The notes beneath the pieces were generated by a model. That model was not told the origin of the DNA, ran no database searches, and saw nothing but the letters and a program-made list of their open reading frames with translations. Of a stretch of DNA of 64,000 bases, positions 32,173-63,889 are shown one piece after another. The DNA is taken from positions 124,001 to 188,000 of the IMG/VR virus record IMGVR_UViG_3300036770_006893; one strand, given 5' to 3'. Position 1 is the stretch's first letter, and each line of letters starts with the position of its first letter. The translations under genes were made by a program, and so were the position numbers.

Positions 32173-34002
32173 TTATGTGGGCGACGGAGTTATTGTCGGT
32201 GTGACGCTTGGCGATTGAGCGTTGGGCGACGGACTTATTGTCGGTGTGACGCTTGGCGATTGAGCGTTGGGCGACGGACTTATTGTCGGTGTGACGCTTG
32301 GCGATTGAGCGTTGGGCGACGGAGTTATTGTTGGGGTGGGAGTTACTGTAGGACTCACTACTGGAATATCCTCGTCCAAATTAACTATTGTTGAAGAAAC
32401 TCGTCCTGATTCATTTAGTGTGATTCTTATTGAAGATTTTGCATTATTTTGTTTGTTTGAATCAATACATCTGCCTATATTAAAATTTTGAGGTAGTGGG
32501 CTAAGGGGTGTGCTGTATCCCACCTGCGATGATGTTTGAGCTTGTAGAATAAAGCTTGATGTGTTTGGGCTATTATCAGCAGGTACGTACCCTAAGTCTA
32601 ACATAATGCCGATAGTTACAGGTGTTATTTGTGCTGTAGAAATCGCCACGCCAGCAAAGCTACCGTAGCTCATAATATCTTGTGGTAGTGGTGGGTGAAG
32701 TAGAGTGTGTCTACTGAGCGGATTTCTTTCATAGGCCCAGTGAGATATTCTATTAATTTCGTCAAATTCATTCTGCCACATTAATGGCATATTTTTTCTT
32801 TTTGCTTGAAATTTGAATAATTTATTATATTCGTCTTGGGCTTTAACATAAAAATTTCCACGAAATGTGCCCTTAAGCTGATATCTCCCAGCTAGTTGTC
32901 CATGATTTGTTATAATTGGGCGTTTTTTCAATTTAGAAATAGCATAATCGCTCCAAAACGGCCCAAAACCTAAGGCATGCCCTAGTTCATGCACAAAAAC
33001 AGATTTCCATGTGTTATCGTTTGTGGTGCTGATAACGTCTGGATGAGTATTAATTATTAGAGCAAAGGATATTGAGTTAGCTTGTGGAGACATATCTTCG
33101 CCTATAGACACAGCATCTGTCACATAGCATTGTGCCAAAACAGAGGAGCCGTTTTCTGGAGGCTGTTGAATTATTTCAAGATTGCTAAGAAATATTCCTT
33201 TAAAGCTATCATATATTTTATTAATTTGTATCGCAATCGTTTCGTCCATTTTAATGTGTTTTTCCCACTCTTCTGCAGCAAAGGTTAGCAGCGACTTTAG
33301 ACTATCCGGTATATTACTGTTGTGCTCCCAAGAAGTTTTATCAAATAAGATATTTTTTAAGTCTGGTAGTAAAACTATAGGTCTGGTTACGTTGCTGGTT
33401 GGGCTAATTGATCCGTCGGCATTTTCAGCTAGTACCCTAAATATATAGCTGTTATTTGTGTCAAGATTATCAAATATGTATCTTGTTGGACGTAAAAGAA
33501 CAGAGGTATATGGTACGGGCTTAGAGAACCAAATGTCTCCACCATTATATGAATATTGTATATGGTGTCTAACTATGTTAGACCCACCGTTATTTTCGGA
33601 TAAAGTCCAATCTATTTGTATAGTATTGTTGTTTAAAAGAATCGCCGTAACATTTTGTGGTGGGGTTGGGGCGGATCTTGCGTCCAGAACGAGCACGTTG
33701 GATACGGTAGGAGTATCGTATGGTAGATTTCCATTTTTTGATGTTACTAGAACAGCCCTCAAATAAATAACAGAACCGAGCGGTATTCTAACAGATTGTT
33801 GTCCCGAGTAATACGAGACAGTTATTTTTTGTGTATTTCCAGAAAAATTACTATTATAACTATATTCTAAATAAATTTGTTCCGGTTTTTCTGTATTATT
33901 TCTATTCCTAGGATCTACGTACAGTTGATGTTGCCATCTGACAACAAAAAAACCTTCTGATGTTTCTTCTTGTAAAAATATAGTAATTGGATTAATAGCC
34001 AT
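32173..34002 (-). CDS. Fibronectin-III + zinc metalloprotease (leishmanolysin/M8-like) + Pro/Thr/Ser tail; putative virion protein
   Basis: PTPPQNVTA..W....NGGSNI..H.IQY..YIFRVLAEN (FN3); HELGHALG, SHW, DIMS Met-turn. Confidence 0.8.
   Translation of the reverse strand: MAINPITIFLQEETSEGFFVVRWQHQLYVDPRNRNNTEKPEQIYLEYSYNSNFSGNTQKITVSYYSGQQSVRIPLGSVIYLRAVLVTSKNGNLPYDTPTVSNVLVLDARSAPTPPQNVTAILLNNNTIQIDWTLSENNGGSNIVRHHIQYSYNGGDIWFSKPVPYTSVLLRPTRYIFDNLDTNNSYIFRVLAENADGSISPTSNVTRPIVLLPDLKNILFDKTSWEHNSNIPDSLKSLLTFAAEEWEKHIKMDETIAIQINKIYDSFKGIFLSNLEIIQQPPENGSSVLAQCYVTDAVSIGEDMSPQANSISFALIINTHPDVISTTNDNTWKSVFVHELGHALGFGPFWSDYAISKLKKRPIITNHGQLAGRYQLKGTFRGNFYVKAQDEYNKLFKFQAKRKNMPLMWQNEFDEINRISHWAYERNPLSRHTLLHPPLPQDIMSYGSFAGVAISTAQITPVTIGIMLDLGYVPADNSPNTSSFILQAQTSSQVGYSTPLSPLPQNFNIGRCIDSNKQNNAKSSIRITLNESGRVSSTIVNLDEDIPVVSPTVTPTPTITPSPNAQSPSVTPTISPSPNAQSPSVTPTISPSPNAQSPSVTPTITPSPT
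32178..32330. repeat. 45-bp tandem repeat, about 3.4 copies (encodes SPNAQSPSVTPTI(S/T)P)
   Basis: tgggcgacgga(g/c)ttattgtcggtgtgacgcttggcgattgagcgt at 32178, 32223, 32268, partial at 32313. Confidence 0.95.
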
Positions 34003-34041
34003 TATATTTAATTTTTCTATTATGTTTTTATGGGTTCGCTA

Positions 34042-34263: not shown

Positions 34264-34288
34264 AATAATTCTCCTTCGGTATACTAGT

Positions 34289-34300
34289 ATAATACACCAA
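34289..34300 (-). promoter_or_regulatory. GGTGTA motif (candidate late promoter)
   Basis: TTGGTGTATTAT in intergenic gap. Confidence 0.45.
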
Positions 34301-34311
34301 ATTTATAGATA

Positions 34312-35394
34312 CTATAATTGTCCACCATCAGTAATATTCCAATTATAGGTAGTACTTAATACATTTCTGGCTGACGCTGCGGCAGACGAATATTTATTTG
34401 TTCCAACTCCCCAAATCACATCATTAGAAGGAGATAATAGTTGAGACCAAGCAATAAGGGCTGCGTCGTAGTTTGATGTTCCCCAAGTGTCGCTGAAAAA
34501 CATCGACTCCATAGTAGTGACCTTGCGAATGTCCCAGCTGGAAATGTCTTGAGTAAAGGCAGTTGCTCCGCTAAAAGTAAGCAACAAGGTAGTAACGCTT
34601 GCTGTGTTCCAAGAGCTAATCGGTTGGTTGAACGAGGACGCATTCTGGAACATGCCTCTCATATTAATCACCTTAGATGTATTCCAAGAACCGATTGGCT
34701 GGTTGAAGGCACTGCAACCGGCAAACGTACCATTCATGTTTGTTACGGCCGATGTATTCCAAGAACCGATAGGTTGATTGAAAGAGTATGAGTTGAAGAA
34801 CATGAAGCCCATGTTTGTTACGGCTGATGTGTTCCAAGAACCGATGGGCTGGTTGAAAGAGTATGCGTTGAAGAACATGAAATCCATGTTTGTCACAGTG
34901 GAAGTATTCCACGAAACAATATTAACATCATTAAATTGTGAACAACCACTAAATGCTCCTTGAAGACTAGTAATGTTACTATTAGTTGGCAAGTTTGCTG
35001 GGCATTGAATAAGGTTTATGCAGTTTGCATATGCATTTAGGAGCGAGGTTAATCCAACAGTTCCAAAACTTAAACACCTTACGAGTTTAGATCTATTGTT
35101 TGTTGTACTATTTGCGGTTCCGTAATTTAGCTGTGTCATCGTGCCACTAATTTGCACAACATAAATTCCGGGAGTAGCATAAGTATGAGTCTTAAATCCA
35201 GTGGTGGTGTGCGACTCGCTTGAACCGTCGCCCCAGTCTATGACGCAGTTAACCGTTCCATTAAGAGGTACAGATATGGTATTGTTTATAGGCTCTTTTG
35301 AAGTATCGTAGACTAATACTAAATTAGTAGTATCGTAGTTAAACCTTATTTGCGAACCTATTAAAAGACTATTATTTTTTACAAAAGTACTCAT
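34312..35394 (-). CDS. BspA/DUF285-type repeat surface protein with PKD-like N-terminus
   Basis: IDWGDGS..H.Y..PG.Y.V; repeats [20 protein letters not shown]. Confidence 0.85.
34530..34920. repeat. 75-bp (25-aa) degenerate tandem repeat
   Basis: gt(a/g)ttcca anchors at 34604, 34679, 34754, 34829, 34904. Confidence 0.9.
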
Positions 35395-36163: not shown

Positions 36164-37936
36164 TTAGTTAGTTTTTTCGCCTATATAGTGGCCTTGAATA
36201 GTACCATTAATACTTCTTAACAAGACTAAGTATTTTCCAGCAACAAAATTTGGTGGGGGATTGTACCAATCATCAACAATACTCCAAATTACATTAATAG
36301 GGTTGGTAAACGTCAATTCTAATAACACATCAACACTCTTAGCACTAGGCCAATTTGATCCTTCTATAAAATTAATGTTAGTAACTGTATTTTGCCAATT
36401 TGCAAAAACTTGAATCTGTCTATCTATAGCATACGATATACCAAAATTTACTGATGGGCCTGGTATTGTACCAATGGATGGAGCATATATCAGAGTAGGC
36501 GCACTTAGTCCATTATTTACAGTTAAACTACCATTTAATGTATTGTCTTCTGATGTTTGTTGATAAAAATTTCGGCCTTGAATCGTTCCAGTATTTAGTA
36601 GAGTACCGTCTGGATTTAAATATACCGTTTTATCTAAAAGATTATCTCCACCACTACTGGTGCGCAAATAAATTCTAGCACTAGGATTTAAAGAAGTTGA
36701 GGATGCCTCATCAACAATCTCCATTCTTAAACCGCCAAGAATAGTCACGTTTTTGTTATAATCTAAACTTTCTCCTCGTACAGCAAATATACCATCACCA
36801 CTATTAGCTATTTCTGGTAAAACTTGTGTGCCTCGTGCTCTTCTAAAAATTAATCTACTTGGTTCGATATCAGCGTTATAGAATTGATTAATTCTAAAAT
36901 TGCCTATGGTTTCATCAGCTATTAGCCTAAGAGTATTATTATCTGTGCTATATGTTAAATACGAGCTAGGTTCCCAATTGTTTGTGTTAGAATTATATAC
37001 TAATAAATGATCGTTTTGTAAACCGGCTAAATCTACATCATGATTATCATCTAAATGTCCATAACTAGTTGGTCTTACAAAAATGCGACCAGTATTTTGA
37101 CTAACATATAATACTATAGCAGCGCTGATGCTATGTTTTGGTTCAACCTTTGTTAATTTACCAGGAACTGTTGGATGAACATATAATATGTCACCTTCAA
37201 CCCAAGCTGGTTCATCGGCCGCATATAAATTTTGATCGCCATTAACTGCTCCGTTGCCTCTGGTATCTAAATTTTCAACATGACCAAAATTAATAGCATA
37301 ACCTTTTTGATTAATGTCAATATCTGTTAATACTAATCCCATAAAGCGTATTTCTCTTATAGTTCCATCAGCAGTGTACAAACTAGCTTCTATGAGAGAG
37401 TTATTATGAACATCACTGACATAAACTGCTTGACCAGCTCTAAGAATGGAACCAGTATTATTGCGAATTCTAAAATAGTTATGTTCGCCAACATGAATTT
37501 TAGTCCCACCTTCTAGACCCAAATCCAATGTGCCTTGTGCTTCATCCCAACCTATTTCAGCAGTTTCTATTGTAGGGTCTGCTGTTATGTTAAAAGATAT
37601 TTTATCAAATTCAGCATTGCCGCTGGTACTAATGGTTAAATTATCATTATCGTCATCATAAACTATATTTATTCCGCTACCGGGTATTAAAAATCCGCTG
37701 GCGCCAACAACATCTTGAACATCTTCTGGCTGCAATATAACGTCTTGATTATTTTCTGATTGTAAATATGGTAAGCTATTCCAAGCAGTAACTCCATCGC
37801 CAATTTTTAATTTACCAGTATCTTTTTCATATCCTGGCTCTCCTAAGCGTAAAACTTCACCACCGGGTTGCGGCTCACTATTGGCCCATTCAGCAGCGGT
37901 ACCTCTTCTAAATTTTATTACATCTTTACGCGTCAT
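36164..37936 (-). CDS. Putative tail fibre with Mtd-N/hyaluronidase-type N-terminal domain
   Basis: IKFRRGTAAEW...GEPGYEKDTGKLKIGDGVTAWNSLPY. Confidence 0.75.
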   Translation of the reverse strand: MTRKDVIKFRRGTAAEWANSEPQPGGEVLRLGEPGYEKDTGKLKIGDGVTAWNSLPYLQSENNQDVILQPEDVQDVVGASGFLIPGSGINIVYDDDNDNLTISTSGNAEFDKISFNITADPTIETAEIGWDEAQGTLDLGLEGGTKIHVGEHNYFRIRNNTGSILRAGQAVYVSDVHNNSLIEASLYTADGTIREIRFMGLVLTDIDINQKGYAINFGHVENLDTRGNGAVNGDQNLYAADEPAWVEGDILYVHPTVPGKLTKVEPKHSISAAIVLYVSQNTGRIFVRPTSYGHLDDNHDVDLAGLQNDHLLVYNSNTNNWEPSSYLTYSTDNNTLRLIADETIGNFRINQFYNADIEPSRLIFRRARGTQVLPEIANSGDGIFAVRGESLDYNKNVTILGGLRMEIVDEASSTSLNPSARIYLRTSSGGDNLLDKTVYLNPDGTLLNTGTIQGRNFYQQTSEDNTLNGSLTVNNGLSAPTLIYAPSIGTIPGPSVNFGISYAIDRQIQVFANWQNTVTNINFIEGSNWPSAKSVDVLLELTFTNPINVIWSIVDDWYNPPPNFVAGKYLVLLRSINGTIQGHYIGEKTN

Positions 37937-38003: not shown

Positions 38004-41000
38004 TTAAATATCCCAACCCGCCTGTCTAAGATTAACTAATGCTTGCGCACCAGGAATAGTTCTTGCGATTATCGTACCACGACTACTAGTACGCACTCTA
38101 ATTTTTGTATTAGCAGTATAATTGTACTCGAACGCAGAACTTGCTGGCCTGGGTGTTGTGAAATAAGTAGAGAATAATGATTTATTTTGATCCCATTTGA
38201 TTAACAGATTGTCCAAGTCACTGCCCGGTAAATACAAATCGCTCAGTAAAGCAGGGAGAATCCAATCGTCTGTTCCCAGAATACTAAAGTCTGCCGCATC
38301 CTTAAGACTACTAGCATTCCATCTAGATAATTTTGTTGTGTATCCGGTAAGCCTAAACATATCTCGCATACTTATAACATTAGAAACATTCCAATTATTG
38401 ATATCTGTTGTGAAAGCACCAGCATTATAAAACATGCTATTCATATTTGTAACTTGAGAAGTATCCCAATTGCTTATATTTCCTCTAAAGCTTACAGCCG
38501 ACTCAAACATAGAACTCATGTTTGTAACTTTACCGGTATTCCAAGAATCTAGTGTATCGCCGGTAAATGCCCGAGCGTCTTGAAACATCCTCGACATATT
38601 TGTAACATTGCTGGTATCCCACAGGGATAACGGAATATTAAATCTTACACATCCTCGAAACATGTTATTCATATCATTTATGCTCGATGTGTCCCAGCTC
38701 ATAACATTAGGGTCATTGAAAGTAGTACATAATGGTAGTTGTATGTGTTCGGCCTTTGGAATATAATCTGGAACAGAATTGAGGAGTGGTAAAGAGTCTA
38801 AAGTTATTCTCTTAAGCGAACTTATCCAAGAAGATATTCCCGTAACACCGCCTGCTACACTCGATGTGGGAGTAGAGGTAAAGCTATCAGCAATGACTAC
38901 ATCCGTAGTATTAGTATGATTAATTGGAGTAATTTTAATAGATCCAGTTTTATTCCTTGCAGTAACCACACTAGGTCTTCTGTCGGTAAAGTTAATAACT
39001 AGCCTATGTTTGCCATCAAAGAATACTGTTCCAACTACCCCATCCTGCTGAGTTCCGCCCTCTACTAAGTACCAGCTGGGCTCCGACGCGTCTATAGTAA
39101 TCGTTATAGCCATCGTACTAGAATTAATTAGGGTAGAATAATTATGGCCATAATCTATAATTAAGGGGCTTATTACTGAGTCAGGTGGTATTGGAGAAAC
39201 ACTAACGCTTGGACTAACAGTAGGACTGATGGTTTGTGTTGGTGTTGCTGTTGCGCTAACGCTAACGCTAACGCTTGGAGTGGGCGTCATGCTGTGTGTT
39301 GGCGTTAGTGTTGGAGTCATGGTTTGCGTTGGTGTTGGAGATCTCGATGGCAATGGTGTTGGTGTTACTGTTGCGCTCACGCTATTGGTTGGCGTTACTG
39401 TTCTTGTTACAGTCGGCGATACTGTTATACTTGGACTAACTGTTTGGCTAACCGTAACCGTGGGTGTGGTCGTGGGTGTAGTAGTTGGACTATTAGTTAT
39501 TGTTGGCGTGGGCGTAGGAGTTCTTGTACTAACGGGAGTTGGAGAAGGAGTTGGGGTGCATTGTGCTGCACACTTTAATGCAATGTAGTCTGTGCTTGTG
39601 GCGCCGGTTGATTCTCTAGTTAATCTAATAAAAGCATTAACATTTACATTACCATTCAGGAGGGCTAAAGATGTTAATCTAGCATTATTTGCCACATAAA
39701 CGTGGCCGCCAGCAGGATAAAATGAAACATTGCTAGAATCACTACCAAATCTAAAATAGTACTTTTCTTTAGAAATATTATTAGTACTAGACAAGTCATC
39801 TATATAACTATCTGGTAAATAATTTTTAATATCTACCATAATTGGTATATATTGTTTACATCCATTTCCAGAAACTTCTATTTGACGATTAGAAGGAGCA
39901 ACAAACTCTACATCTGTTACAAATTCCTTGGAATAGCATTTGTTGCATTTTAATAAAGACTCAGACCAAGCAATACCACAATTTGGTTGAGATGCTTTTG
40001 CTATATTGAAACGTAATATATTATAGATTTTACTAAAATCTTTAGTTTTTTCAGAAACTGGTGGTAGATTAAAATTAGTGTTTTTATCATTGACAAATGT
40101 AAAGGTGGATGATATTGTATGAGTATCGCCATTTGCAATGAACACATTATCTTTATCGGATATATGAGCTGGCCAATTACTGTCGGTGGAATCAAAGAAA
40201 TACGAATATGATGTATTTTTAGATAGTCCAGTTACCACAACATCAACCACAGCATGATCACCCTCAAATTGAGACAAATCAATATTATTAGTCATAGATA
40301 ATATTTTAGGGCATTTATTGTACTGTTCTTTAGCGTCATGGCATGAGTCGCACTGTACAGTAAAGATATGATCAACTTTTTCTGGACATAAAGTTTGGAT
40401 ATTTTTAGCATTTCCCGAAGAATCAGATAAAACAGGCTGTGGAGCATCATGGGATTGGGTGGGATATGTCCAATAGGCGGCTAGTTCTGAATCATAAAAT
40501 GCCGCCTTGTACCATTCGTTGTGAGATGGAATAAAATATTTTGCATCAAAATTTCTGTATATTTGGTTATCAAATATTATATTGCGTAAATCATATGCTC
40601 CGACTAGTAGTTTATCATTGATAGTAGCAGGATCGTATACTCTAATATTAACGTCAAAAGACCCGAAGTTATCTTCAGTACATCTGACATCGTTTATGCC
40701 TAGGTATAGTCGTCCAGAAATTTCTGGGTTATACCTACCGCCAGTACCTATTTCAAAAATAGTTCCATTATCTCCTATTTTTCCAACCAAAGCAGCCACT
40801 GGTATACTTACTGCTTGAGGAACATCAAAGCCACAAGTTGCGGAAGCGAGTTCTCCTAAATTAACACCCTCTGGTCCTGTCCATTGGTTTATATCAGTAA
40901 CATCTGTAAACTTAATTGTCCCAGACGCTTGTATCTCAACAATAGAGTCGGGATGTAAGTCTATATTGGAATCAACCCAATCTTGAGCTATAGAATTATT

Positions 41001-43640: not shown

Positions 43641-43653
43641 ATTTGGTCCTATT

Positions 43654-43665
43654 AAATTTTTATGT
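43654..43665 (-). promoter_or_regulatory. GGTGTA motif (candidate late promoter)
   Basis: TTGGTGTAAATC in gap upstream of the 1878-aa gene. Confidence 0.45.
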
Positions 43666-43707
43666 GATATATTGATTTACACCAATGTTTTAGGTCGTAA
43701 TTAATTT

Positions 43708-44124
43708 TTATGAGCATATTGGTATCAATAAAGCCTTATCATCAGGAGCGCATTGCTCAAAAATAACTTCATCAGTAGAAGGGTCTATAATTTGTATTTT
43801 GGCTATGCCTCTATGTACAGAGCCAGGGCTTGGGATGCCAACGAGTTCTATTTTATATTTAGCATCTTGCGAAGCTGTGCCAGCGGGTAATATTATTCTA
43901 GATTCTCTATATCCACCATCTGATGCATTATTTAAATCAATTTCTCCAACTTCGTTGGAATTAATATAAACATCAAATCTTGCTCTATTGCACCTATGAC
44001 CACCGGAACATACCGATGGATCATAGCTTACTTTTAATACAAAAGAACTGATATCTTCGTATGCAACGCACGGTGGAGGAGGTTCTGGATCTGGGAAGTC
44101 GATACAAGAATAGTCATCGGTCAT
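43708..44124 (-). CDS. Hypothetical Cys-containing beta-rich protein
   Basis: 138 aa; PPPPC, CSGGHRCNRA. Confidence 0.7.
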   Translation of the reverse strand: MTDDYSCIDFPDPEPPPPCVAYEDISSFVLKVSYDPSVCSGGHRCNRARFDVYINSNEVGEIDLNNASDGGYRESRIILPAGTASQDAKYKIELVGIPSPGSVHRGIAKIQIIDPSTDEVIFEQCAPDDKALLIPICS

Positions 44125-44136
44125 AATAGAATTCCT

Positions 44137-45336: not shown

Positions 45337-45354
45337 AATTATTACTCACAAAAT

Positions 45355-56019: not shown

Positions 56020-56141
56020 TTTTAATATACCTTATTATGTGTGTTATTAACTTGAATAAATATTGTTTTTACTAATTTTGTTACATATATCTATATAGAA
56101 TTGGTATTATGCGATTCATAATGTTTTGCTCATTATATAGT

Positions 56142-57242
56142 TTATACGCCAAAAACTGGATTTTTGTTGGAATGAATTTGATTAACTCTATAAAATTGTC
56201 CACACTTACTCATATGCTTGATAGATCTAGCCCCTATATAACAGCAGCATGATCTTATACCTCCTAATAATTCTTGAACCACCGTATTTGTTGTTCCTTT
56301 ATAAGGGACTGTAATTTTAGTGCCTTCTGAAGCCCTATATTTTTTAATATTATCCTCATATGTTTCTTGAGCATGATGTGTGCTCATACCATAATACGTG
56401 AAACTACCTTTAGTTTTTTTATTCGATTCTAATATTGTAGAATAATCTCCTCCAAATTCCCATTCTCCTTCGCTCTCATCAACACCAGCAAAATATCCTC
56501 CCAGCATTACAAAATCAGCACCGCCGCATAGAGCCTTACAAACATCTCCAACGTTTTTATGACCACCATCAGAACAGATCAATCCAGGTTTTTTATCTCC
56601 GTTTTGAAGACCATGTGCCACATAAGCATTTTCTAAACAACAGCTCAACTGAGGCAAACCGCATCCTGTCAAGAAACGAGTTGTACATGCGGACCCGCCA
56701 CCAATGCCGCATTTTACAATATCTACGCCACCATAAATAATCAGTTCTTGGGTCGAAGAAGTATTGGTTATATTACCGGCTATAATAATACTTTCTGGGA
56801 AATTATCTCTTACTTTTTTACAATACTTAACAAAAACGTCCATATGTCCATTTGGTACATCTATACAGATATTAGGCTGTATATTGATTTTATTTTTTAG
56901 TTCAAGTAAATGATTTAAGTCACTTTTTTTATATCCAATAGATACAAATGTATAATCTATATTATCTGGATAATCCTTGAAGTACTGAAATAATTCATCT
57001 ACAGTATGATATTTATGTAAGCAAGCTATAATTTTATGACGAGCTAGTGCTATAGCCATAGAAAAACTACAAAAGCTCATATTTGCACATATGATAGGTA
57101 CTCCATTCCAAACTCTTGGAGAATGATAAAAGTGAAAAGTTCGACTAATATCTATATCCGATCTACTAGTAAGGGTAGATCTTTGAGGAGCAATTAATAC
57201 ATCATCAAAATCAAGTTTGGTTTCATTAATTATTTTTTGCAT
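56142..57242 (-). CDS. guaC: GMP reductase
   Basis: LDFDDVLIAP, CIDVPNGH, KCGIGGGSACTTR, SDGG, MLGG, YYGMS, GGIRS. Confidence 0.9.
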   Translation of the reverse strand: MQKIINETKLDFDDVLIAPQRSTLTSRSDIDISRTFHFYHSPRVWNGVPIICANMSFCSFSMAIALARHKIIACLHKYHTVDELFQYFKDYPDNIDYTFVSIGYKKSDLNHLLELKNKINIQPNICIDVPNGHMDVFVKYCKKVRDNFPESIIIAGNITNTSSTQELIIYGGVDIVKCGIGGGSACTTRFLTGCGLPQLSCCLENAYVAHGLQNGDKKPGLICSDGGHKNVGDVCKALCGGADFVMLGGYFAGVDESEGEWEFGGDYSTILESNKKTKGSFTYYGMSTHHAQETYEDNIKKYRASEGTKITVPYKGTTNTVVQELLGGIRSCCCYIGARSIKHMSKCGQFYRVNQIHSNKNPVFGV

Positions 57243-57768
57243 TGAAAAAATACCATCTGTTAAAAGCTTCTATTTCTGAATAATCATTTATGTAGTTTAG
57301 ATAATCTCTAATTTCTAGCCATGATGAAAAAATCATCTGATGAGGTATGGTGCCAAAAAGCCAATCAGGGGCTTGTTGTTTGCCTTGAACCATATGAACT
57401 ATAATAGGTTTTTTCTGACGATTTGCCCAAAAAATTTCTTCATATGTTCCGCACGGATGAACATCTAGATCCAGATTGACTATCATAAAGTCGCTGATAT
57501 CAACCAGTCTTAAATCTACAGATCGAATTACTTTCATTAATTGAGCTAATTCATCATAAGATTTTTGCTGCTTTAACATTTTTTTATAAAGGTGCGTTCT
57601 TTCATCTTCTTGACCAATCATAATTGGTTTTTTGATTGGATTAAAAACAACTATACCTAAATTTTCTAGGAATGGAGTAATATCGTCCCTCCATCCACTT
57701 CCCCTATCGGCAACCCTATCCATTGCCCCTGCTAGATAAACTCTTTGATTTCTAAGCCTATTATTCAT
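57226..57768 (-). CDS. Nucleoside 2-deoxyribosyltransferase / dNMP N-glycosidase (NDT/DNPH1-like)
   Basis: VYLAGAM, VDLRLVDISD, GTYEEI. Confidence 0.75.
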   Translation of the reverse strand: MNNRLRNQRVYLAGAMDRVADRGSGWRDDITPFLENLGIVVFNPIKKPIMIGQEDERTHLYKKMLKQQKSYDELAQLMKVIRSVDLRLVDISDFMIVNLDLDVHPCGTYEEIFWANRQKKPIIVHMVQGKQQAPDWLFGTIPHQMIFSSWLEIRDYLNYINDYSEIEAFNRWYFFNAKNN

Positions 57769-57775
57769 TTAGATA

Positions 57776-57853
57776 TTAATATTTGTTTGTTAGGCCTTTG
57801 TGAATTCCTAAGAGGATGCAGCTAACAAAAACTATAGCAAAAACTACATTCAT
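57776..57853 (-). CDS. 25-aa hydrophobic peptide
   Basis: MNVVFAIVFVSCILLGIHKGLTNKY; ATG 6 nt after a TATAAT box. Confidence 0.55.
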   Translation of the reverse strand: MNVVFAIVFVSCILLGIHKGLTNKY

Positions 57854-57859
57854 ATGTGT

Positions 57860-57887
57860 ATTATAGCGCATGGAGCAGGATAGGCAA
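57860..57887 (-). promoter_or_regulatory. Sigma70-like promoter TTGCCT-N16-TATAAT (leaderless)
   Basis: -35 at 57887-57882; -10 at 57865-57860. Confidence 0.6.
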
Positions 57888-57970
57888 GCGGTTTTATAAG
57901 CCTAAGGCACACTGTTAATAATTAATCTAGTGTCACGTACTATGACAATATTTTGGTTTATTGTCTGTAA

Positions 57971-58744
57971 TTATATTTTAAGCCTATGTTCTTGAAACTG
58001 CTCTTGGAAATCGTCCATTGACTCGTGTACTTTGTGTATCGGTGGTTCGCCACCAGATTCTAATAACCAGTGTTTAAGCCAAAAGTTTTTGTTTCTTAAT
58101 AGGCGGTTTTCAAGAGATAAGTATCCGGTATGAACAACAAAAGGTAGATTGTTTCCCCTGAGGCTTTGTATGTCGCTTGGAAAAGCTTTGCATAAAACCA
58201 AATTACCATTAGAGTCTATTAATTCACATGTATCGCTTTTTGTAGTGTCTATAAATCCGTTGTTTTTTATTGCAAAATTAACAGGACCCCTAAATAAACC
58301 AGACTTATGCATATACCATTTTGGTGTTATGGATGAATAATATTCATATGTTTTATATAGATTGATAGATGGTATCATATATGATTGACTATTGTCGTAA
58401 ATTAAATTGGAGGCAGCGGCATACCATATTGGCTTTTGCCATATTGGTATGTATTCATCCATATCTAGGCCTATTTTTATTTGATGTGTGCTAGAAGTAG
58501 ATTGAAGAGCTAGATTTTTAATCTTACCATCTAGTAGATAATCAGAGTAGGGTATGTCTGATGATATAATTTTTAAATTATTATATAATCTTTGCTCACT
58601 AGTAAGCACAGATAGAGTTTCATCCTCACTAGTATTTACACATATAACCACTTCATCAGCCATAGCGCAAAAGTTTTTAACTGAGTATTTATAGTTAAAA
58701 TTATTTTTTATTAGATTGAATGCTGATGAGTATATAGAAATCAT
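57971..58744 (-). CDS. GT-A (GT2-like) glycosyltransferase
   Basis: ADEVVICVNTSEDET, KNLALQ, LDMDE (DxD). Confidence 0.75.
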   Translation of the reverse strand: MISIYSSAFNLIKNNFNYKYSVKNFCAMADEVVICVNTSEDETLSVLTSEQRLYNNLKIISSDIPYSDYLLDGKIKNLALQSTSSTHQIKIGLDMDEYIPIWQKPIWYAAASNLIYDNSQSYMIPSINLYKTYEYYSSITPKWYMHKSGLFRGPVNFAIKNNGFIDTTKSDTCELIDSNGNLVLCKAFPSDIQSLRGNNLPFVVHTGYLSLENRLLRNKNFWLKHWLLESGGEPPIHKVHESMDDFQEQFQEHRLKI

Positions 58745-59598
58745 TTGATTATTATTTTATCACTTGTTGATATATTATAAGCTTTATTAATTTGTTCGAT
58801 TTGATTTAATTGATTTTTGGCTATACTTTTACACGCGTCAATATTGATTTTGGATAGATCAATATCTGTTTTTGGAGTACATGATGGGAGTATGTATATG
58901 TCTCCGTATCTTGATACTGAGTAACAGAAATTTACATGTTCTATGTGTCCACATGTTGACCAATAACAATCTGGTCTTTTTAATATATCTGTTTTGATTA
59001 GTGCAAATCCGCTAAATCCAGACATGATTTTTATAGCACTATTTTGTTTCCACAATTGCCTATCAGAATCTAATAAAAATGGACAATCGGTAAAATACAA
59101 TCCGTTATTGCCAAAATAATCTCTGAACGCCGAAACATCGTAAAAACTATTTTGTGTTTCATTGGTCATGAGATCTTCTATTTGATTCTGTCTTGTATTA
59201 GCAACTACCATTGCGCAGTTTTTCACATTTGTTATGAATTCATATAGTATTATAAAATTTTGATTAGTAAATATAATATCAGTATCTATTAAAAGAGTAT
59301 ATTCAGAATCGATGTTTTTTATTAATGTTTTTGCCTTATTTCTATAATAGGCCATAAGCACAAGTCTTTCCACAAGGCTTACAGAACCAAATTGGGGAGT
59401 ATTTAATTTTTCTGATATTATTGATCCTGATTTATTTTTGATCCAAGAATTAATAATTTCTAATGTTTTATCTTCAGAGTCATTCTCATAAAAGTAAAAA
59501 CTAAAATCTCCCAGTGTGGACAAGTCATCTAATGAACGCAAAGTTCGATAGATGTGTTTTTCAGAATTTCTCCACAATCCTATTACAGAAATATTCAT
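58741..59598 (-). CDS. GT-A glycosyltransferase (CAP59/GT69-like)
   Basis: FYENDSEDKT, MAYYRNK, IDTDI, SGFSGFALIK, EHVNFC. Confidence 0.7.
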   Translation of the reverse strand: MNISVIGLWRNSEKHIYRTLRSLDDLSTLGDFSFYFYENDSEDKTLEIINSWIKNKSGSIISEKLNTPQFGSVSLVERLVLMAYYRNKAKTLIKNIDSEYTLLIDTDIIFTNQNFIILYEFITNVKNCAMVVANTRQNQIEDLMTNETQNSFYDVSAFRDYFGNNGLYFTDCPFLLDSDRQLWKQNSAIKIMSGFSGFALIKTDILKRPDCYWSTCGHIEHVNFCYSVSRYGDIYILPSCTPKTDIDLSKINIDACKSIAKNQLNQIEQINKAYNISTSDKIIIK

Positions 59599-59608
59599 TG
59601 AATATAAT

Positions 59609-60217
59609 TTATTTTCCTAGAATATGAACAGTTACATTGAACTTAGACCAAATATCATCAATTAAATCTGATATGAAATACCAGTTTCCTCCAGCTAATC
59701 CGCTACCAAACCTAGGACAATGTATGTCGAAGATATCTGTAGATGATTCATTATTTTTCAGTTGGCTGTTAATGAAAGAGGCAACTGCGCTCATGGATTT
59801 GGTAAGGGCCAAATAGTTCAATGGTCTAGTATTTGATGGCGATATCACCCCATTCTGGGCAATCATATTAGCAACATATAGAGAATTTTTTGTTTTGTTA
59901 TTTTCGATAACCTTTATAATTTGACAATATCCCAAATTAGACCTAAGAAATGATTTACCAAGCATGTGGTAGTTCATTTTGACTATAGGAAATTTATCAG
60001 CTATAAAAGCAGCGAATCCTGCGCCAAAAGAATCAATGTTGTTGCATACGTGTGGGATTATGACACTCGAACCATTATTAGGTGTATTAATTTTTTCAAT
60101 ACAGCAATTAAATATGTCGTGCTTACTAATAACGTATGAATGTCTTTTATTGTTTTTATTGGTTTTTATTGACATTTTAATTACCTTATAATTTTTGTCC
60201 ATTTTAATTTTGGACAC
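59609..60217 (-). CDS. Macrodomain protein (ADP-ribose processing)
   Basis: IIPHVCNN..SFGAGFA, VANMIAQ, IHCPRFGSGLAGGNW. Confidence 0.85.
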   Translation of the reverse strand: MSKIKMDKNYKVIKMSIKTNKNNKRHSYVISKHDIFNCCIEKINTPNNGSSVIIPHVCNNIDSFGAGFAAFIADKFPIVKMNYHMLGKSFLRSNLGYCQIIKVIENNKTKNSLYVANMIAQNGVISPSNTRPLNYLALTKSMSAVASFINSQLKNNESSTDIFDIHCPRFGSGLAGGNWYFISDLIDDIWSKFNVTVHILGK

Positions 60218-60851: not shown

Positions 60852-60873
60852 GTTTTTCTCCAAAATCAAACCT

Positions 60874-60984: not shown

Positions 60985-62631
60985 ATGAATACAAATATAA
61001 CTCTGGTGACAGGAATATGGGACCTTGGTAGATCTAATCTATCAGATGGTTGGTCTAGGGCTTTTGAGCACTATATAAATAATTTCAGGCTACTGCTAAA
61101 TAATACTAAAGATATAAATTTGGTAGTATTTATAGACAAGTCGTTGGAAGAATTAGTGTGGTCTATAAGAGAAAAGACTAATACCAGAGTATACCACCAT
61201 TCAGTAGAAGAGTTTGATAGTAATTTTTTCCCATTTCGTGAAGAAGTAGAAAAAATAAGAAAAAACGAAGAATGGTTGAACCAAGCGGGTTGGCTTAGAG
61301 AAAGCACTCAAGCTAGGCTAGAAATGTACAATCCTTTAGTTATGAGCAAGATGTTCCTGCTGCATAATGCTAAAATATATAATGATTTTAATAGTGATTA
61401 TCTTTTTTGGATAGATGGCGGGATAACAAATACTGTGCATCCAGGTTATTTTAGTAGCGATAAGGTTCTTCAGAAAATATCTGAAAAATTAGATAATTTT
61501 TTGTTTATATGCTTTCCATATAATACAGAATCCGAAATACATGGGTTCAAAATAGAAGGAATGAGAAAATTTAGTCAGTGTGATTCTGTTAAAAGAGTTG
61601 CTAGGGGAGGTTTTTTTGGTGGAAAATCTGAGCTTATATCACCAGCTAATGATATGTATTATGCTTTGCTTAAGGATACTTTGTCTCAAGGATATATGGG
61701 AACCGAAGAAAGCATATTTACTATCATGTCTTATTTAGACAGCAAAAGTTTTAGAGTAGAGATGATAAATGAGGACGGCCTTATATCTACCTTCTTCGAA
61801 AATGTAAAAAACAATAAATTTATATCACTAAATAAATCACAAAAAATACACAAAAACAAAAACATAGAGCTGTATATAAATACATTTAACTCTCCAAAAC
61901 AACTTAAAATGGTGATAGAAAGCTTTGAACGGCACGATACAAATTTCCTAAATAAAACAAAAAAGTTTCTAATTAATAATTCAACAAATGAAAAATTTGA
62001 TACAGAATATGACGAGATATGTAATCAATATAACTTTAATCAAATCAAAAAAGGTAATATAGGTATATGCGGTTCCAGACAATTGGCCGCAGAAATGTTC
62101 TATAAAAATAAAAGCCAGTATATGTTATTTTTTGAGGATGATATGTTAATAGATTTTTCTGGTGTTTGTAGATTCGGTTTTCCCAAAAAAACAAAAGATC
62201 TCTTTAATAATTTAGTTTCAATAATGGATCAAGAAAATTACGATTTTATTAAGCTCAGCTTTTCAGAATTCTACGGACATAATGGAATGCAATGGAGTTG
62301 GCATAATGTTCCACATAATAAAAAAATAGAATATTTTGGCGAAATCAAAAACAAACCATTCACATTATTTAAAAACATAAAATCAAAGAATGGTGTTCCG
62401 TATGCCGACGGAGAGGTTTACTACTCCAACTGGCCACATATTATAAACCAAGAAGGCAATAAGAAAATGTTTATAGACACCAAATGGGCCAACCCTTTTG
62501 AACAAACTTGGATGAGCCATATTTACTCATTGACAAAAGAACAAAAAGTATTTCCAGCAATATTGCTATCTAGTCCAATAACACATAATAGGGTAGATTT
62601 TTATGAGTCTTCAGAAAGAAAAGAAAACTAA
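60985..62631 (+). CDS. WlaTC/HtrL-family glycosyltransferase fused to a second GT-A-like domain
   Basis: ITLVTGIWDLGR, MSKMFLL, FWIDGG, GGFFGG, GTEE; second domain LFFEDDM. Confidence 0.78.
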   Translation: MNTNITLVTGIWDLGRSNLSDGWSRAFEHYINNFRLLLNNTKDINLVVFIDKSLEELVWSIREKTNTRVYHHSVEEFDSNFFPFREEVEKIRKNEEWLNQAGWLRESTQARLEMYNPLVMSKMFLLHNAKIYNDFNSDYLFWIDGGITNTVHPGYFSSDKVLQKISEKLDNFLFICFPYNTESEIHGFKIEGMRKFSQCDSVKRVARGGFFGGKSELISPANDMYYALLKDTLSQGYMGTEESIFTIMSYLDSKSFRVEMINEDGLISTFFENVKNNKFISLNKSQKIHKNKNIELYINTFNSPKQLKMVIESFERHDTNFLNKTKKFLINNSTNEKFDTEYDEICNQYNFNQIKKGNIGICGSRQLAAEMFYKNKSQYMLFFEDDMLIDFSGVCRFGFPKKTKDLFNNLVSIMDQENYDFIKLSFSEFYGHNGMQWSWHNVPHNKKIEYFGEIKNKPFTLFKNIKSKNGVPYADGEVYYSNWPHIINQEGNKKMFIDTKWANPFEQTWMSHIYSLTKEQKVFPAILLSSPITHNRVDFYESSERKEN

Positions 62632-63889
62632 AAACCAAAACAGCATATTTGTGCAGATAGCTGCTTATAGGGATCCACAATTGATGCCGACCCTAGACGA
62701 TATGCTAGATAAGGCCATGAGACCTGATGATCTAAGCATAGGAATAGCTTGGCAACACTGCGATAATGATAAATGGGACAATTTAGACAAATACATCAAT
62801 GATAATAGATTCAAAATTATAGATATAAACTATAAGGAATCTAAAGGAGTTTGTTGGGCAAGAAACATGGTTCAGCAGTTATATAACAATGAAAAATATA
62901 CTCTTCAATTAGATAGTCATCATAGATTTGAAAAAGATTGGGATAAAACTCTAATAGATATGGTTAAAAATTTACAAAAAAAGGGATATAAAAAACCATT
63001 ATTAACATCTTATATACCTAGTTTCGATCCGGATAATGATCCAGCAGCAAGAGTTTTGCAACCATGGAAAATGAATTTCGACAGATTCATACCTGAAGGC
63101 GCTGTATTTTTTATACCATCTAATTTTGATCCATGGGACAATGTTGATGAACCACTTCCGGCAAGATTTTATAGTGCTCACTTTGCTTTTACTGTCGGAC
63201 AATTTTCTAAAGAAGTTCAGCATGATCCTGAGTATTATTTTCACGGAGAAGAAATCAGTATAGCAGCACGAGCTTATACGCATGGGTATGACTTATTTCA
63301 TCCAAACAAGGTTGTTTGTTGGCATGAATACACAAGAAAAGGCAGAACAAAACAATGGGATGATGATCCGAAGTGGGTAGAGAAAAATAATTTGTGTCAT
63401 CTAAAAAACAGAAAACTTTTTGGTATGGACGGCGAAAAACAAGATATTGATTTTGGCAAATATGGATTTGGTAGCCGTAGGACTCTTAGAGAGTACGAAA
63501 AATATTCAGGTTTGAGCTTCAAGGACAGATCCATCCACAAGTCTGTACAACAAAAAATAGACCCAATATCTGCAAATACCTTGTCCTTAACCGACGAAGA
63601 ATTTGATGCTAGTCTCATGAGTATTTTCAGACACTGTATAGATATTTCTTATGATCAGGTTCCAGAAAGCGATTATGATTTTTGGGCAGTTGCATTTAAA
63701 AATGCTAAAGGCGAAGATATGTATAGGCAGGATGCTGATAGAAATGAAATTATTTCTATGAAAGCAGACCCAGATGGATATTGCAAAGTTTGGCGAGAGT
63801 TTCAAACAAAACAAAAACCCTATAGTTGGATTGTTTGGCCCCATAGCGAAAGTAAGGGATGGGCCAGTCCAATAACAGGAGTACTATAA
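62603..63889 (+). CDS. Polypeptide/hydroxyproline alpha-GlcNAc transferase-like (GT60, Skp1-Gnt1-type)
   Basis: SIFVQIAAYRDP, SKGVCWARN, LQLDSHHRF (DxH), FHGEEI, AYTHGYDLFHP. Confidence 0.85.
   Translation: MSLQKEKKTKNQNSIFVQIAAYRDPQLMPTLDDMLDKAMRPDDLSIGIAWQHCDNDKWDNLDKYINDNRFKIIDINYKESKGVCWARNMVQQLYNNEKYTLQLDSHHRFEKDWDKTLIDMVKNLQKKGYKKPLLTSYIPSFDPDNDPAARVLQPWKMNFDRFIPEGAVFFIPSNFDPWDNVDEPLPARFYSAHFAFTVGQFSKEVQHDPEYYFHGEEISIAARAYTHGYDLFHPNKVVCWHEYTRKGRTKQWDDDPKWVEKNNLCHLKNRKLFGMDGEKQDIDFGKYGFGSRRTLREYEKYSGLSFKDRSIHKSVQQKIDPISANTLSLTDEEFDASLMSIFRHCIDISYDQVPESDYDFWAVAFKNAKGEDMYRQDADRNEIISMKADPDGYCKVWREFQTKQKPYSWIVWPHSESKGWASPITGVL

What the first reader, a model, noticed from the sequence alone, without database searches (positions are those of the whole stretch)
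32173..63889. Putative phage-encoded mucin-type O-glycosylation system for virion proteins
Seen: four long (T/S-P)n tracts in three large structural-region proteins (about 32176-32365, 39183-39560, 42392-42758, 47210-47712). They are mostly codon-diversified, so they look selected at the protein level. The same window holds a GT60-type transferase (62603-63889; DSH metal motif) coupled to an HtrL-like GT, plus about ten other GT-like genes, a nucleotidyltransferase-like gene, PAP2 and methyltransferase-like genes. Established: GT60 enzymes (Dictyostelium Gnt1/Gnt2, trypanosome OGNT) put the first alpha-GlcNAc on Hyp/Thr of protein acceptors, including mucins, and some mycobacteriophages glycosylate virions with their own GTs. 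Inference: an initiating polypeptide-GlcNAc-transferase plus elongating GTs builds a glycan coat on phage mucin stalks (rigid spacers, protease or predator shielding, host mimicry).
Basis: partly seen in the sequence, partly recalled or inferred. Interest (0 to 1): 0.85.

Follow-up and report, generated by a model that had tools for sequence, protein, structure and literature searches.

The report
Phage mucin-like protein glycosylation cassette
A large freshwater phage carries a sugar-adding enzyme of the type that starts mucin-style glycosylation in protists. Across phages and bacteria this enzyme sits next to genes with long threonine-proline tracts, so these phages probably sugar-coat their own fibre proteins, which has not been described for this enzyme family.

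Summary
Four T/S-P tracts of 64-178 aa lie in three large proteins of a tail-fibre-like region, and a solid GT60 (PF11397, DxH motif) overlaps an HtrL-like two-domain GT. The count of "about ten other GT-like genes" is too high: Pfam supports three, plus two below threshold.

- GT60 and the HtrL-like gene form a conserved pair that brackets a variable set of GTs and methyltransferases.
- 15 of 47 viral GT60 loci hold a TP tract, against 1 of 118 control loci.
- In 120 viral loci picked only for TP-coding DNA, GT60 is the joint most widely shared of 787 protein families. The 118 control loci have none.
- In 80 bacterial GT60 loci, TP genes pile up within 1 kb of GT60. They include Tat-signal surface proteins and T6SS VgrG spikes with (TP)n tails.
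- The modelled GT60 structure matches mucin-type ppGalNAc-transferases first.
- The unrelated cultured phage XacN1 has the same cassette, 15 TP-tract ORFs and Schiff-positive virion proteins.

Still inferred: the acceptor, the sugar, virion location in this phage, and the benefit. No paper found describes this. I rate it a new variant of a known kind, of high interest.

The parts
62603..63889 (+). GT60-family glycosyltransferase (428 aa). It has a GT-A catalytic domain with a DxH motif and a C-terminal beta-sandwich domain (aa ~312-428). It has no signal peptide or TM segment, so it is expected to be cytoplasmic.
   Evidence: PF11397 E 2.6e-75. D24, D104, H106, E217, D230 and H241 are invariant in 36 homologues. 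AF2 model pLDDT 91.3. The top 44 PDB fold matches are ppGalNAc-transferases. The C-terminal domain has no significant PDB match.
60985..62631 (+). HtrL/WlaTC-like two-domain glycosyltransferase (548 aa): an N-terminal HtrL_YibB part and a C-terminal GT2-like part. It overlaps the GT60 gene by 29 nt.
   Evidence: PF09612 E 3.2e-12. A homologue lies in 40 of 47 viral GT60 loci. The Atlas cluster has 3145 members, 99% viral, with related clusters carrying HtrL_YibB plus GT2.
45355..48015 (-). 886-aa protein with a 178-aa T/S-P tract (47200-47733) and an FGE-sulfatase (C-type-lectin-like) domain. Candidate glycan acceptor and fibre protein.
38004..43640 (-). 1878-aa protein with two T/S-P tracts (42375-42776 and 39249-39572), three FGE-sulfatase stretches and a C-terminal DUF285 repeat domain. 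Candidate glycan acceptor and fibre or adhesin protein.
32173..34002 (-). 609-aa protein: fn3, a leishmanolysin (M8)-like zinc-protease domain (HExxH motif) and a C-terminal 64-aa TP/SP tail made of a 45-bp tandem repeat. Candidate acceptor.
36164..37936 (-). 590-aa protein with an Mtd_N / tail-fibre-type N-terminus. It marks the 32-48 kb region as a host-recognition (fibre) module.
   Evidence: PF18454 E 3.3e-11. Several PHROG tail-fibre and tail-spike families match the N-terminus.
34312..35394 (-). 360-aa PKD + DUF285 repeat protein, an adhesin-like neighbour of the TP proteins.
54946..60217 (-). Block conserved upstream of the HtrL-GT60 pair in the window's own clade of loci: GT4 (54946-56019), GMP reductase (56142-57242), nucleoside deoxyribosyltransferase-like (57226-57768), faint GT2-like (57971-58744), weak GT2 (58741-59598) and an unknown 202-aa ORF (59609-60217). 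Any role in the glycan pathway is not shown.

Best explanation
The overlapping HtrL-like and GT60 genes are the conserved ends of a phage glycan-building cassette. The cassette works in the host cytoplasm on the phage's own proteins. GT60 is a retaining GT-A enzyme with a DxH metal site, built like mucin-type initiating transferases. I propose that it puts the first sugar on Thr/Ser of the long T/S-P tracts in the fibre or adhesin proteins (886, 1878, 609 aa, and a 520-aa protein just beyond the window). The HtrL-like enzyme and the variable GTs and methyltransferases encoded between or beside the pair would then extend and cap the glycan, giving stiff, protease-resistant glycosylated stalks on the virion.

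Shown: the genes, the motifs, the fold resemblance and the genomic coupling.
Inferred: the acceptor, the sugar, the order of steps, virion location in this phage and the benefit.
For: 1. Family and fold. PF11397 E 2.6e-75. DxH and a later His are invariant. AF2 pLDDT 91. The top 44 PDB matches are all ppGalNAc-Ts. GT60 is sister to GT27 and shares the DxH motif and polypeptide Ser/Thr O-glycosylation (PMC7185993).

2. Cassette. The HtrL partner is present in 40 of 47 viral loci. In most relatives GT60 and the HtrL-like gene bracket 1-8 variable genes: GT25, GT10, GT17, PLOD-GT, GT2, methyltransferases and HAD plus a nucleotidyltransferase.

3. Coupling seen from GT60. A TP tract lies within 10 kb in 15 of 47 viral GT60 loci, against 1 of 118 control loci (p = 1e-8). 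A TP-protein gene lies directly next to GT60 in L021, L037, L038, L087 and L148, and directly next to the HtrL-like gene in L021, L070, L133 and L157. One or two genes separate the TP gene from GT60 in L015, L019, L033, L035 and L044.

4. Coupling seen from TP. In 120 viral loci chosen only by a TP-coding DNA pattern, GT60 is the joint most widely shared of 787 families (7 loci) and HtrL is third (6 loci). Together they occur in 10 loci, against 0 of 118 controls (p = 0.0016).

5. Bacterial genomes. 29 of 80 GT60 loci hold TP ORFs. Density is 10.2 per 100 kb within 1 kb of GT60 and 0-0.9 per 100 kb at 6-10 kb (p = 1e-7). The adjacent TP proteins have twin-arginine-like signals. In Burkholderiales, GT60 sits in T6SS clusters beside VgrG proteins with (TP)n tails.

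6. TP-adjacent GT60s are scattered over all major clades of the GT60 tree (25 changes; starred branches force at least 20).

7. Cultured phage XacN1 shares almost nothing with this phage except GT60, HtrL and GMP reductase. It has the same cassette, 15 TP-tract ORFs and at least two Schiff-positive virion bands (PMC5852040). Within 20 kb of the tail sheath gene, GT60-bearing XacN1 and RAS14 have 4 and 3 TP ORFs. GT60-lacking RsoM2USA and PA5oct have none.
Against: - There is no biochemical evidence for this phage or for any prokaryotic or phage GT60. Acceptor type is extrapolated from a few protist enzymes.
- In the window the GT pair lies on the opposite strand, about 15 kb from the nearest TP gene inside the window. 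The nearest one overall is 3.7 kb beyond the window end.
- In the largest viral synteny group (L007-L031 type), the cassette neighbours are not structural genes, and TP tracts are seldom seen within 10 kb.
- Only 10 of 120 TP loci show the module in the stretch held. Many TP proteins may therefore exist without it, or the module may lie elsewhere in the genome.
- Loci are phylogenetically non-independent. After de-replication at 80% identity the viral figure is 8 of 19 clusters.
- The XacN1 glycoprotein bands were not identified, and XacN1 has a second GT (ORF328).
- No capsid or tail core genes were recognised near the window's TP proteins, so 'virion protein' is inferred.
Confidence: 0.62

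Rival explanations
1. The cassette builds or alters a non-protein glycan, such as host LPS, capsule or a lipid-linked sugar, during infection. TP proteins would lie nearby only because both belong to host-surface interaction modules.
For: HtrL_YibB is named after an LPS-core cluster gene, and GT25 and GT9-type genes occur in cassettes. The window has a PAP2 phosphatase. In Jiulongibacter (L307), ORFs whose N-termini resemble a UDP-glucose dehydrogenase and an NAD-dependent sugar epimerase/decarboxylase lie beside the cassette, as read by eye without a search. A Pfam-confirmed carbamoyltransferase lies inside it.
Against: No priming phosphoglycosyl transferase, flippase or polymerase was seen in any cassette examined. 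The enzymes lack membrane segments. The sharp pile-up of TP genes within 1 kb of GT60 in many phyla, and GT60 being the joint top family among TP-anchored loci, are not expected. The best fold matches are polypeptide transferases.
Confidence: 0.12
2. The TP tracts are plain extended linkers and are not glycosylated. GT60 co-locates with them for another reason: it binds TP tails as a chaperone or cargo, or it is a delivered effector, as its position beside VgrG/PAAR in T6SS clusters could suggest.
For: T6SS effector genes typically sit next to VgrG and PAAR genes (my own knowledge), which is the layout seen. PT linkers are common in unglycosylated bacterial proteins (my own knowledge). Most TP loci sampled show no GT60 in the stretch held.
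Against: The catalytic residues are invariant across phage and bacterial members. The pair comes with a variable set of further GTs and methyltransferases, which points to glycan building rather than binding. XacN1 virions contain glycoproteins. Tat-type signals on the bacterial TP neighbours fit modification before export.
Confidence: 0.13
3. The GTs modify phage DNA or nucleotides (hypermodified bases) to evade restriction.
For: Phage GTs often glucosylate DNA (reviewed in PMC12619734). GMP reductase, a nucleoside deoxyribosyltransferase-like gene, a dNMP kinase and dCMP deaminase are in the window. The first two lie next to the cassette.
Against: The same GT60-HtrL pair sits in bacterial chromosomes beside exported TP proteins and in T6SS clusters. 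The fold is closest to polypeptide GTs, not to DNA glucosyltransferases. No hydroxymethylase was seen in the window.
Confidence: 0.05

Closest known systems
CAZy GT60 / Pfam PF11397: Dictyostelium Gnt1 (Skp1 hydroxyproline GlcNAc-transferase) and Gnt2, Trypanosoma cruzi polypeptide alpha-GlcNAc-transferases
   Same: Same Pfam family at E 2.6e-75, with the DxH metal motif and a soluble GT-A catalytic domain. Like the T. cruzi mucin system, the candidate acceptors are Thr-rich tracts.
   Different: The phage and bacterial members carry an extra C-terminal beta-sandwich domain (missing in the T6SS-linked ones). They are paired with an HtrL-like GT and act in a bacterial cytoplasm. Donor sugar and acceptor are untested. 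PMC7185993 lists GT60 as present in prokaryotes and protists only and describes no prokaryotic function.
GT27 polypeptide GalNAc-transferases (animal mucin-type O-glycosylation initiation)
   Same: They are the best structural matches (top 44 PDB hits, E ~1e-10). They share the DxH motif and dense Thr/Ser/Pro-rich acceptors, followed by elongation by other GTs.
   Different: Sequence identity is 10-16%, so this is not the same family. The phage C-terminal domain is a beta-sandwich with no significant match, not a ricin-type lectin. There is no Golgi context.
Mycobacteriophage virion glycosylation (Freeman et al. 2023, as summarised in PMC12619734)
   Same: Phage-encoded GTs decorate the phage's own virion proteins in the host cytoplasm.
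   Different: There the acceptors are the C-termini of capsid and tail-tube subunits, in actinophages. Here the enzyme family is different (GT60 plus HtrL-like), the proposed acceptors are long TP tracts in fibre-like proteins, and the cassette is hypervariable. I could not read the primary paper, so I did not compare enzyme families directly.
Serine-rich repeat adhesin glycosylation in Gram-positive bacteria (GtfA/GtfB plus variable GTs, accessory Sec export); from my own knowledge
   Same: A cytoplasmic initiating O-GlcNAc transfer onto long Ser/Thr-rich repeats, strain-variable elongating GTs in the same locus, then export by a dedicated route. The bacterial GT60 loci with Tat-signal TP proteins look analogous.
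   Different: The initiating enzyme there is GT-B (GT4), not GT60. The repeats are Ser-rich rather than Thr-Pro. Export uses SecA2/Y2, not Tat, and no phage is involved.
Xanthomonas jumbo phage XacN1 (AP018399; PMC5852040)
   Same: It carries the same cassette: ORF334 GT60 (48% identity) through ORF330 HtrL-like (39% identity). It has 15 TP-tract ORFs and Schiff-positive virion proteins.
   Different: The phage is otherwise unrelated, has 50% GC and infects a Xanthomonas host. Its cassette holds a carbamoyltransferase. The authors listed ORF334 only as a 'glycosyltransferase family protein' and did not link it to TP tracts or identify the bands.

Membership tests
GT60 (PF11397) | Significant match to the family profile above the curated cut-off | tested here: met
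   254.5 bits against a cut-off of 21, E 2.6e-75
GT60 (PF11397) | DxH metal-binding motif in place of DxD, plus a downstream conserved His (shared with GT27) | tested here: met
   D104-S-H106 and H241 are invariant in 36 sequences of 24-100% identity. Motif description from PMC7185993.
GT60 (PF11397) | GT-A fold most similar to GT27 | tested here: met
   AF2 pLDDT 91.3. The top 44 Foldseek PDB hits are ppGalNAc-Ts.
GT60 (PF11397) | UDP-GlcNAc donor and retaining alpha-transfer to a polypeptide Thr/Ser/Hyp | not testable with these tools
   Only indirect support: genomic coupling to TP-tract genes and Schiff-positive XacN1 virions.
Mucin-type protein O-glycosylation system | Long Thr/Ser/Pro-rich acceptor tracts with few other residues | tested here: met
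   Four tracts of 64-178 aa
Mucin-type protein O-glycosylation system | Elongating and capping enzymes co-encoded with the initiating enzyme | tested here: inconclusive
   Clear in relatives: GT25, GT10, GT17, PLOD-GT, GT2 and methyltransferases lie between GT60 and HtrL. In this contig an FkbM methyltransferase and two unknown paralogues follow GT60, beyond the window (L002).
Mucin-type protein O-glycosylation system | Glycans actually attached to the tracts | not testable with these tools
   Needs glycoproteomics
HtrL_YibB (PF09612) | Match to the family profile | tested here: met
   47.1 bits against a cut-off of 24.1. Only profile positions 2-152 of 267 are covered. The Atlas neighbours are HtrL_YibB clusters.
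Diversity-generating retroelement target (considered because of Mtd_N and FGE-sulfatase domains) | A reverse transcriptase and a template/variable repeat pair nearby | tested here: not met
   No long near-identical repeat pair was found in the 64 kb. No RT appeared among the Pfam results.
Mycobacteriophage-type virion glycosylation | Glycosylated C-termini of the major capsid and tail-tube subunits | not tested
   No capsid or tail-tube gene was recognised in the window.

The most novel reading that the evidence does not exclude
GT60 plus the HtrL-like GT plus a swappable set of further GTs may form a widespread, undescribed prokaryotic cytoplasmic 'mucin-type' O-glycosylation system. Its dedicated substrates would be Thr-Pro tracts. 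It would be used in parallel by jumbo phages on fibre proteins, by bacteria of at least three phyla on Tat-exported surface proteins, and by Burkholderiales on T6SS VgrG spike tails. The hypervariable cassette would generate glycan 'serotypes' under arms-race selection.
Probability: 0.4. Interest if true: 0.9.

Novelty: new variant of a known kind. Interest (0 to 1): 0.8.

Why it matters
- GT60 has so far been characterised only in protists, where it starts O-glycosylation. Showing that an abundant phage and bacterial branch (more than 7,400 clusters at 90% identity) serves Thr-Pro tracts would give function to a large set of 'hypothetical' genes. It would also bear on where mucin-type glycosylation came from.
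- It would make glycosylated virions a common feature of large aquatic and plant-associated phages, not a mycobacteriophage oddity. That has consequences for host range, particle stability, grazing and immune recognition.
- It predicts glycosylated T6SS spikes and Tat-exported bacterial mucin-like proteins.
- A cultured system, XacN1 on Xanthomonas citri, already shows glycoprotein-positive virions, so the idea can be tested directly.

Tried and rejected
- A megablast of 24 kb of the window against INPHARED found no related phage.
- A DGR reading (Mtd_N plus FGE-sulfatase) was rejected: no template/variable repeat pair and no RT in the window.
- PDB sequence searches with GT60 and with the HtrL-like protein found nothing useful.
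- I asked whether the GT60 C-terminal domain is a lectin like that of ppGalNAc-Ts. Modelled alone (pLDDT 91), it is a beta-sandwich with no significant PDB match, so the lectin analogy is not supported.
- Pfam and PHROGs left most ORFs around the TP genes unnamed.
- An orthologue-level contrast, asking whether the same fibre protein has TP tracts in phages with and without GT60, failed. XacN1 ORF372 has homologues of its non-TP domain only in the four GT60-bearing phages. I used tail sheath neighbourhoods instead.
- Literature searches for GT60 or PF11397 in phages, for TP-tract glycosylation of tail fibres and for VgrG glycosylation found no relevant paper.
- The Freeman et al. paper could not be read.
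- No tRNA genes are in the window.
- Slip: a Fisher test used 16/47. The correct count is 15/47, recomputed.
Full report
WHAT THE WINDOW IS

The window is a low-GC (31-41%) stretch. Nearly all genes lie on the minus strand up to about 60.9 kb, followed by two plus-strand genes. Pfam finds a large-phage replication and nucleotide set:
- a split PolIII alpha with an RNase T-like ORF between the halves;
- DnaB, primase, RecA, SSB, RNR alpha and beta, dCMP deaminase, dNMP kinase, PhoH and HNH;
- a sigma-70 region-4 protein, a ClpP-like protease, PAP2, GMP reductase and a nucleoside deoxyribosyltransferase-like gene.

The window is identical to part of IMG/VR contig 3300036770_006893 (224 kb), so this is a jumbo phage. 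No cultured phage is close at the DNA level.

CHECK OF THE OBSERVATION

The four tracts are real and lie at the stated places:
- 64 aa at the C-terminus of ORF 32173-34002;
- 134 aa and 108 aa in ORF 38004-43640;
- 178 aa in ORF 45355-48015.

They are T/S/P/V-rich with almost no charged or aromatic residues. Three use all Thr and Pro codons and give only weak DNA periodicity. The first is a 45-bp x3.6 repeat at 96% identity.

The carrier proteins have adhesin or receptor-binding type domains: fn3, FGE-sulfatase (C-type-lectin-like) and DUF285. Their neighbours are a PKD+DUF285 protein and a protein with an Mtd_N tail-fibre N-terminus. The 609-aa protein also has a leishmanolysin-like zinc-protease domain. 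No capsid or tail-core gene was recognised, so 'structural' means 'fibre-like module'.

ORF 62603-63889 is a firm PF11397/GT60 member (E 2.6e-75) with the DSH motif. It overlaps the HtrL-like ORF 60985-62631 by 29 nt.

The other GT genes are fewer than stated. Three have Pfam support and two are below threshold. The 'nucleotidyltransferase-like' and 'methyltransferase-like' ORFs have no Pfam support.

THE GT60-HtrL CASSETTE

GT60 homologues were found in 47 viral loci. The HtrL-like gene accompanies GT60 in 40 of them.

In most relatives GT60 opens, and an HtrL-like gene of about 555 or 780 aa closes, a run of 1-8 small genes that differs from locus to locus. Representatives of these genes are GT25, GT10 (fucosyltransferase-like), GT17, PLOD-type GT, GT2, methyltransferases and a HAD plus nucleotidyltransferase fusion. 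This is the layout of a glycan-building island with two conserved ends and a variable middle.

In the window's own clade the order is HtrL-GT60. The variable genes follow GT60 beyond the window end: an FkbM methyltransferase, two unknown paralogues, then a subtilase and a 520-aa TP protein (L002).

The family is very large and unnamed: more than 7,400 clusters at 90% identity, all hypothetical. The HtrL-like partner's Atlas cluster has 3,145 members, 99% viral.

IS GT60 TIED TO TP TRACTS?

1. Starting from GT60 in viral contigs.
- 15 of 47 loci have a TP tract (a 40-aa window with at least 75% T/S/P) within 10 kb.
- The control was 118 viral loci (about 1 Mb) picked by a collagen-type GXY pattern. 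One of them has a TP tract (p = 1e-8).
- A TP-protein gene lies directly next to GT60 in L021, L037 and L038. One or two genes separate it from GT60 in L015, L019, L033, L035 and L044. Some of these large upstream proteins match 'virion structural protein' PHROGs.

2. Starting from TP tracts.
93 of them have protein-level TP tracts.
- Their 994 ORFs form 787 families, so the sample is diverse. GT60 is the joint most widely shared family (7 loci) and HtrL is third (6 loci). Together they occur in 10 loci.
- The control has none (p = 0.0016; p = 0.014 if only low-GC loci are compared).
- TP genes again flank the cassette directly: L087 and L148 at the GT60 end, and L070, L133 and L157 at the HtrL end.

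3. Bacterial genomes.
- 365 loci encode GT60 relatives, and the best 80 were kept. 29 of the 80 have a TP ORF.
- TP-ORF density is 10.2 per 100 kb within 1 kb of GT60. It falls to 0-0.9 per 100 kb at 6-10 kb (p = 1e-7). This is an internal control that keeps genome and composition constant.
- The adjacent tracts are long and clean. They occur in Saprospiraceae, Lewinellaceae, Jiulongibacter, Arcticibacterium, Vicinamibacterales, Gemmatimonadaceae, Alphaproteobacteria, Caulobacterales, Chthoniobacter and others.
- Several of these TP proteins start with twin-arginine-type signals. Two end in what looks like a T9SS sorting tail. Both features were read by eye and not checked with a predictor. 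A Tat route would fit modification in the cytoplasm before export; this is inference.

4. T6SS loci.
- In 17 loci, almost all Burkholderiales, GT60 lies inside a T6SS cluster. In Ralstonia sp. 25C the order is TssE, TssF, TssG, a fimbrial-like gene, GT60, PAAR, VgrG, TssM.
- 10 of the 12 VgrGs visible in these loci end in S/T-P repeats. Six of them are pure (TP)n.

5. Phylogenetic spread.
- On a tree of 131 GT60 sequences, TP-adjacent members (within 3 kb) are scattered over all major clades: 25 changes, of which starred branches force at least 20.
- After de-replication at 80% identity, 8 of 19 viral clusters and 27 of 69 genomic clusters keep a TP ORF in the locus.

WHAT THE ENZYME LOOKS LIKE

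An alignment of 36 homologues (24-100% identity) keeps D24, D104, H106, E217, D230 and H241 invariant. The AlphaFold model is confident (pLDDT 91.3).

Its 44 best PDB matches are all polypeptide GalNAc-transferases, the initiating enzymes of animal and Toxoplasma mucin-type O-glycosylation. This agrees with the published placement of GT60 beside GT27 and with their shared DxH motif (PMC7185993).

The C-terminal domain is a beta-sandwich with no significant match, so it is not a ricin-type lectin. The T6SS-linked homologues lack it. There is no signal peptide or membrane segment, so the enzyme should act in the cytoplasm, where phage proteins fold and assemble.

A CULTURED COUNTERPART

Only four phages in INPHARED encode GT60: Xanthomonas XacN1 and Xoo-sp13, and Stenotrophomonas CM1 and RAS14.

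XacN1 has the full cassette:
- ORF334, GT60;
- ORF333, carbamoyltransferase, as in Jiulongibacter;
- ORF332 and ORF331;
- ORF330, HtrL-like.

The cassette lies about 3 kb from ORF325. ORF325 is a 3,313-aa protein that follows the baseplate wedge genes and carries TP tracts.

Its 319 kb of unique sequence holds 15 ORFs with TP tracts. These include ORF369, ORF370 and ORF372 beside the tail sheath genes.

XacN1 and the window phage share essentially only GT60, HtrL, GMP reductase and a few weak nucleotide-metabolism hits. The trait pair therefore recurs in unrelated phages.

The XacN1 paper reports at least two Schiff-positive glycoprotein bands in virions and suggests the phage GTs (ORF328, ORF334) make them. 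The bands were not identified (PMC5852040).

Within 20 kb of the tail sheath gene, GT60-bearing XacN1 and RAS14 have 4 and 3 TP ORFs. The nearest GT60-lacking relatives, RsoM2USA and PA5oct, have none. This is a small and local comparison.

MOST LIKELY MECHANISM AND RIVALS

Best reading (about 0.6): GT60 starts, and the HtrL-like and cassette enzymes extend, O-linked glycans on the T/S-P tracts of the phage's fibre or adhesin proteins in the host cytoplasm.

Rivals:
- The cassette makes a non-protein glycan for the host envelope (about 0.12). No priming, flippase or polymerase genes were seen, and this reading does not explain the TP pile-up next to GT60.
- The TP tracts are bare linkers, and GT60 is a binder or an effector (about 0.13). 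The T6SS layout allows this, but the conserved catalytic residues and the companion GTs argue against it.
- The GTs modify DNA or nucleotides (about 0.05). The nucleotide genes beside the cassette hint at it, but the bacterial contexts and the fold do not fit.

Unknown in every case: the sugar, the linkage, which protein is modified, and the selective benefit.

NOVELTY

Searches of the paper library found nothing on phage or bacterial GT60 function, on TP-tract glycosylation of phage fibres, or on VgrG glycosylation.

Phage self-glycosylation is known in mycobacteriophages (summarised in PMC12619734). Cytoplasmic O-glycosylation of Ser/Thr-rich repeats is known for Gram-positive adhesins (my own knowledge).

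I therefore class this as a new variant of a known kind. It uses a different enzyme family and a different acceptor type, and it occurs across several bacterial phyla and in unrelated phages.

Noticed in passing
L329 (Ralstonia sp. 25C chromosome, NZ_CP196737.1 1082150-1103349); also L315, L347, L349, L350, L361, L364: GT60 homologues lacking the C-terminal domain sit inside T6SS clusters (TssE/F/G, PAAR, VgrG, TssM). The adjacent VgrG ends in a (TP)n or similar S/T-P repeat tail of up to ~150 aa. This could mean a glycosylated spike, or GT60 as an effector.
   Followed up: partly
L289:8525-9706(-), L296:8000-9769(-), L307:8968-9834(-), L354:8660-9640(-), L358:11530-12165(+), L339:8442-9989(+): Bacterial TP-tract proteins encoded next to GT60/HtrL begin with twin-arginine-like signal peptides. 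In Saprospiraceae and Lewinellaceae they end in a T9SS-like sorting tail. This suggests cytoplasmic glycosylation followed by Tat export. The features were read by eye and not checked with a predictor.
   Followed up: partly
window 32173-34002 (-): The middle domain (aa ~213-530) resembles leishmanolysin (peptidase M8) and keeps an HExxH zinc motif. The protein is therefore fn3 + metalloprotease + TP tail, an unusual phage protein.
   Followed up: partly
window 7494-11836 (-): DNA polymerase III alpha is split into two ORFs: 9965-11836 (PHP + NTPase) and 7494-9104 (finger + HhH + OB). An RNase T-type exonuclease ORF (9111-9800) lies between them.
   Followed up: no
window 38004-48015 (-): The 1878-aa and 886-aa proteins share three paralogous FGE-sulfatase / C-type-lectin-like modules (DNA repeats at 41031/42996/46231 and 40494/42870/46096, 63-78% identity). 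At the N-terminus of the 1878-aa protein the profile's C-terminal part comes first. With the Mtd_N neighbour this looks like a DGR target, but no RT or template repeat is in the window.
   Followed up: partly
window 56142-57768 (-); XacN1 ORF403: GMP reductase and a nucleoside deoxyribosyltransferase-like gene are conserved next to the HtrL-GT60 pair in the window's clade. GMP reductase is one of the very few genes shared with XacN1 (37% identity). The reason for the linkage is unknown.
   Followed up: no
window 32178-32338: A 45-bp x3.6 tandem repeat at 96% identity encodes the C-terminal tail of the 609-aa protein. This recent expansion contrasts with the codon-diversified tracts elsewhere.
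   Followed up: yes
L002:~13900-16614 and L004:15100-16026 (beyond the window's 3' end): A subtilase (Peptidase_S8, E 8e-50 for the L004 member) is conserved a few genes downstream of GT60 in the window's clade. In this contig a 520-aa TP protein follows it. One TP protein in L021 ends in a peptidase domain. Proteases recur around the cassette.
   Followed up: no
AP018399.1 (XacN1), e.g. ORF384 272200-280671, ORF232-237 124048-133104, ORF369-372 249342-261711: XacN1 encodes 15 TP-tract ORFs. One is a 2,823-aa 'glycerophosphoryl diester phosphodiesterase' whose TP tracts lie between aa ~320 and ~1950. Another group is a six-gene run, ORF232-237.
   Followed up: partly
window 34574-34915: 75-bp periodic DNA repeats (78% identity) underlie the DUF285 repeats of ORF 34312-35394. 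Weaker copies lie in the DUF285 domain of the 1878-aa protein (38356-38564).
   Followed up: no
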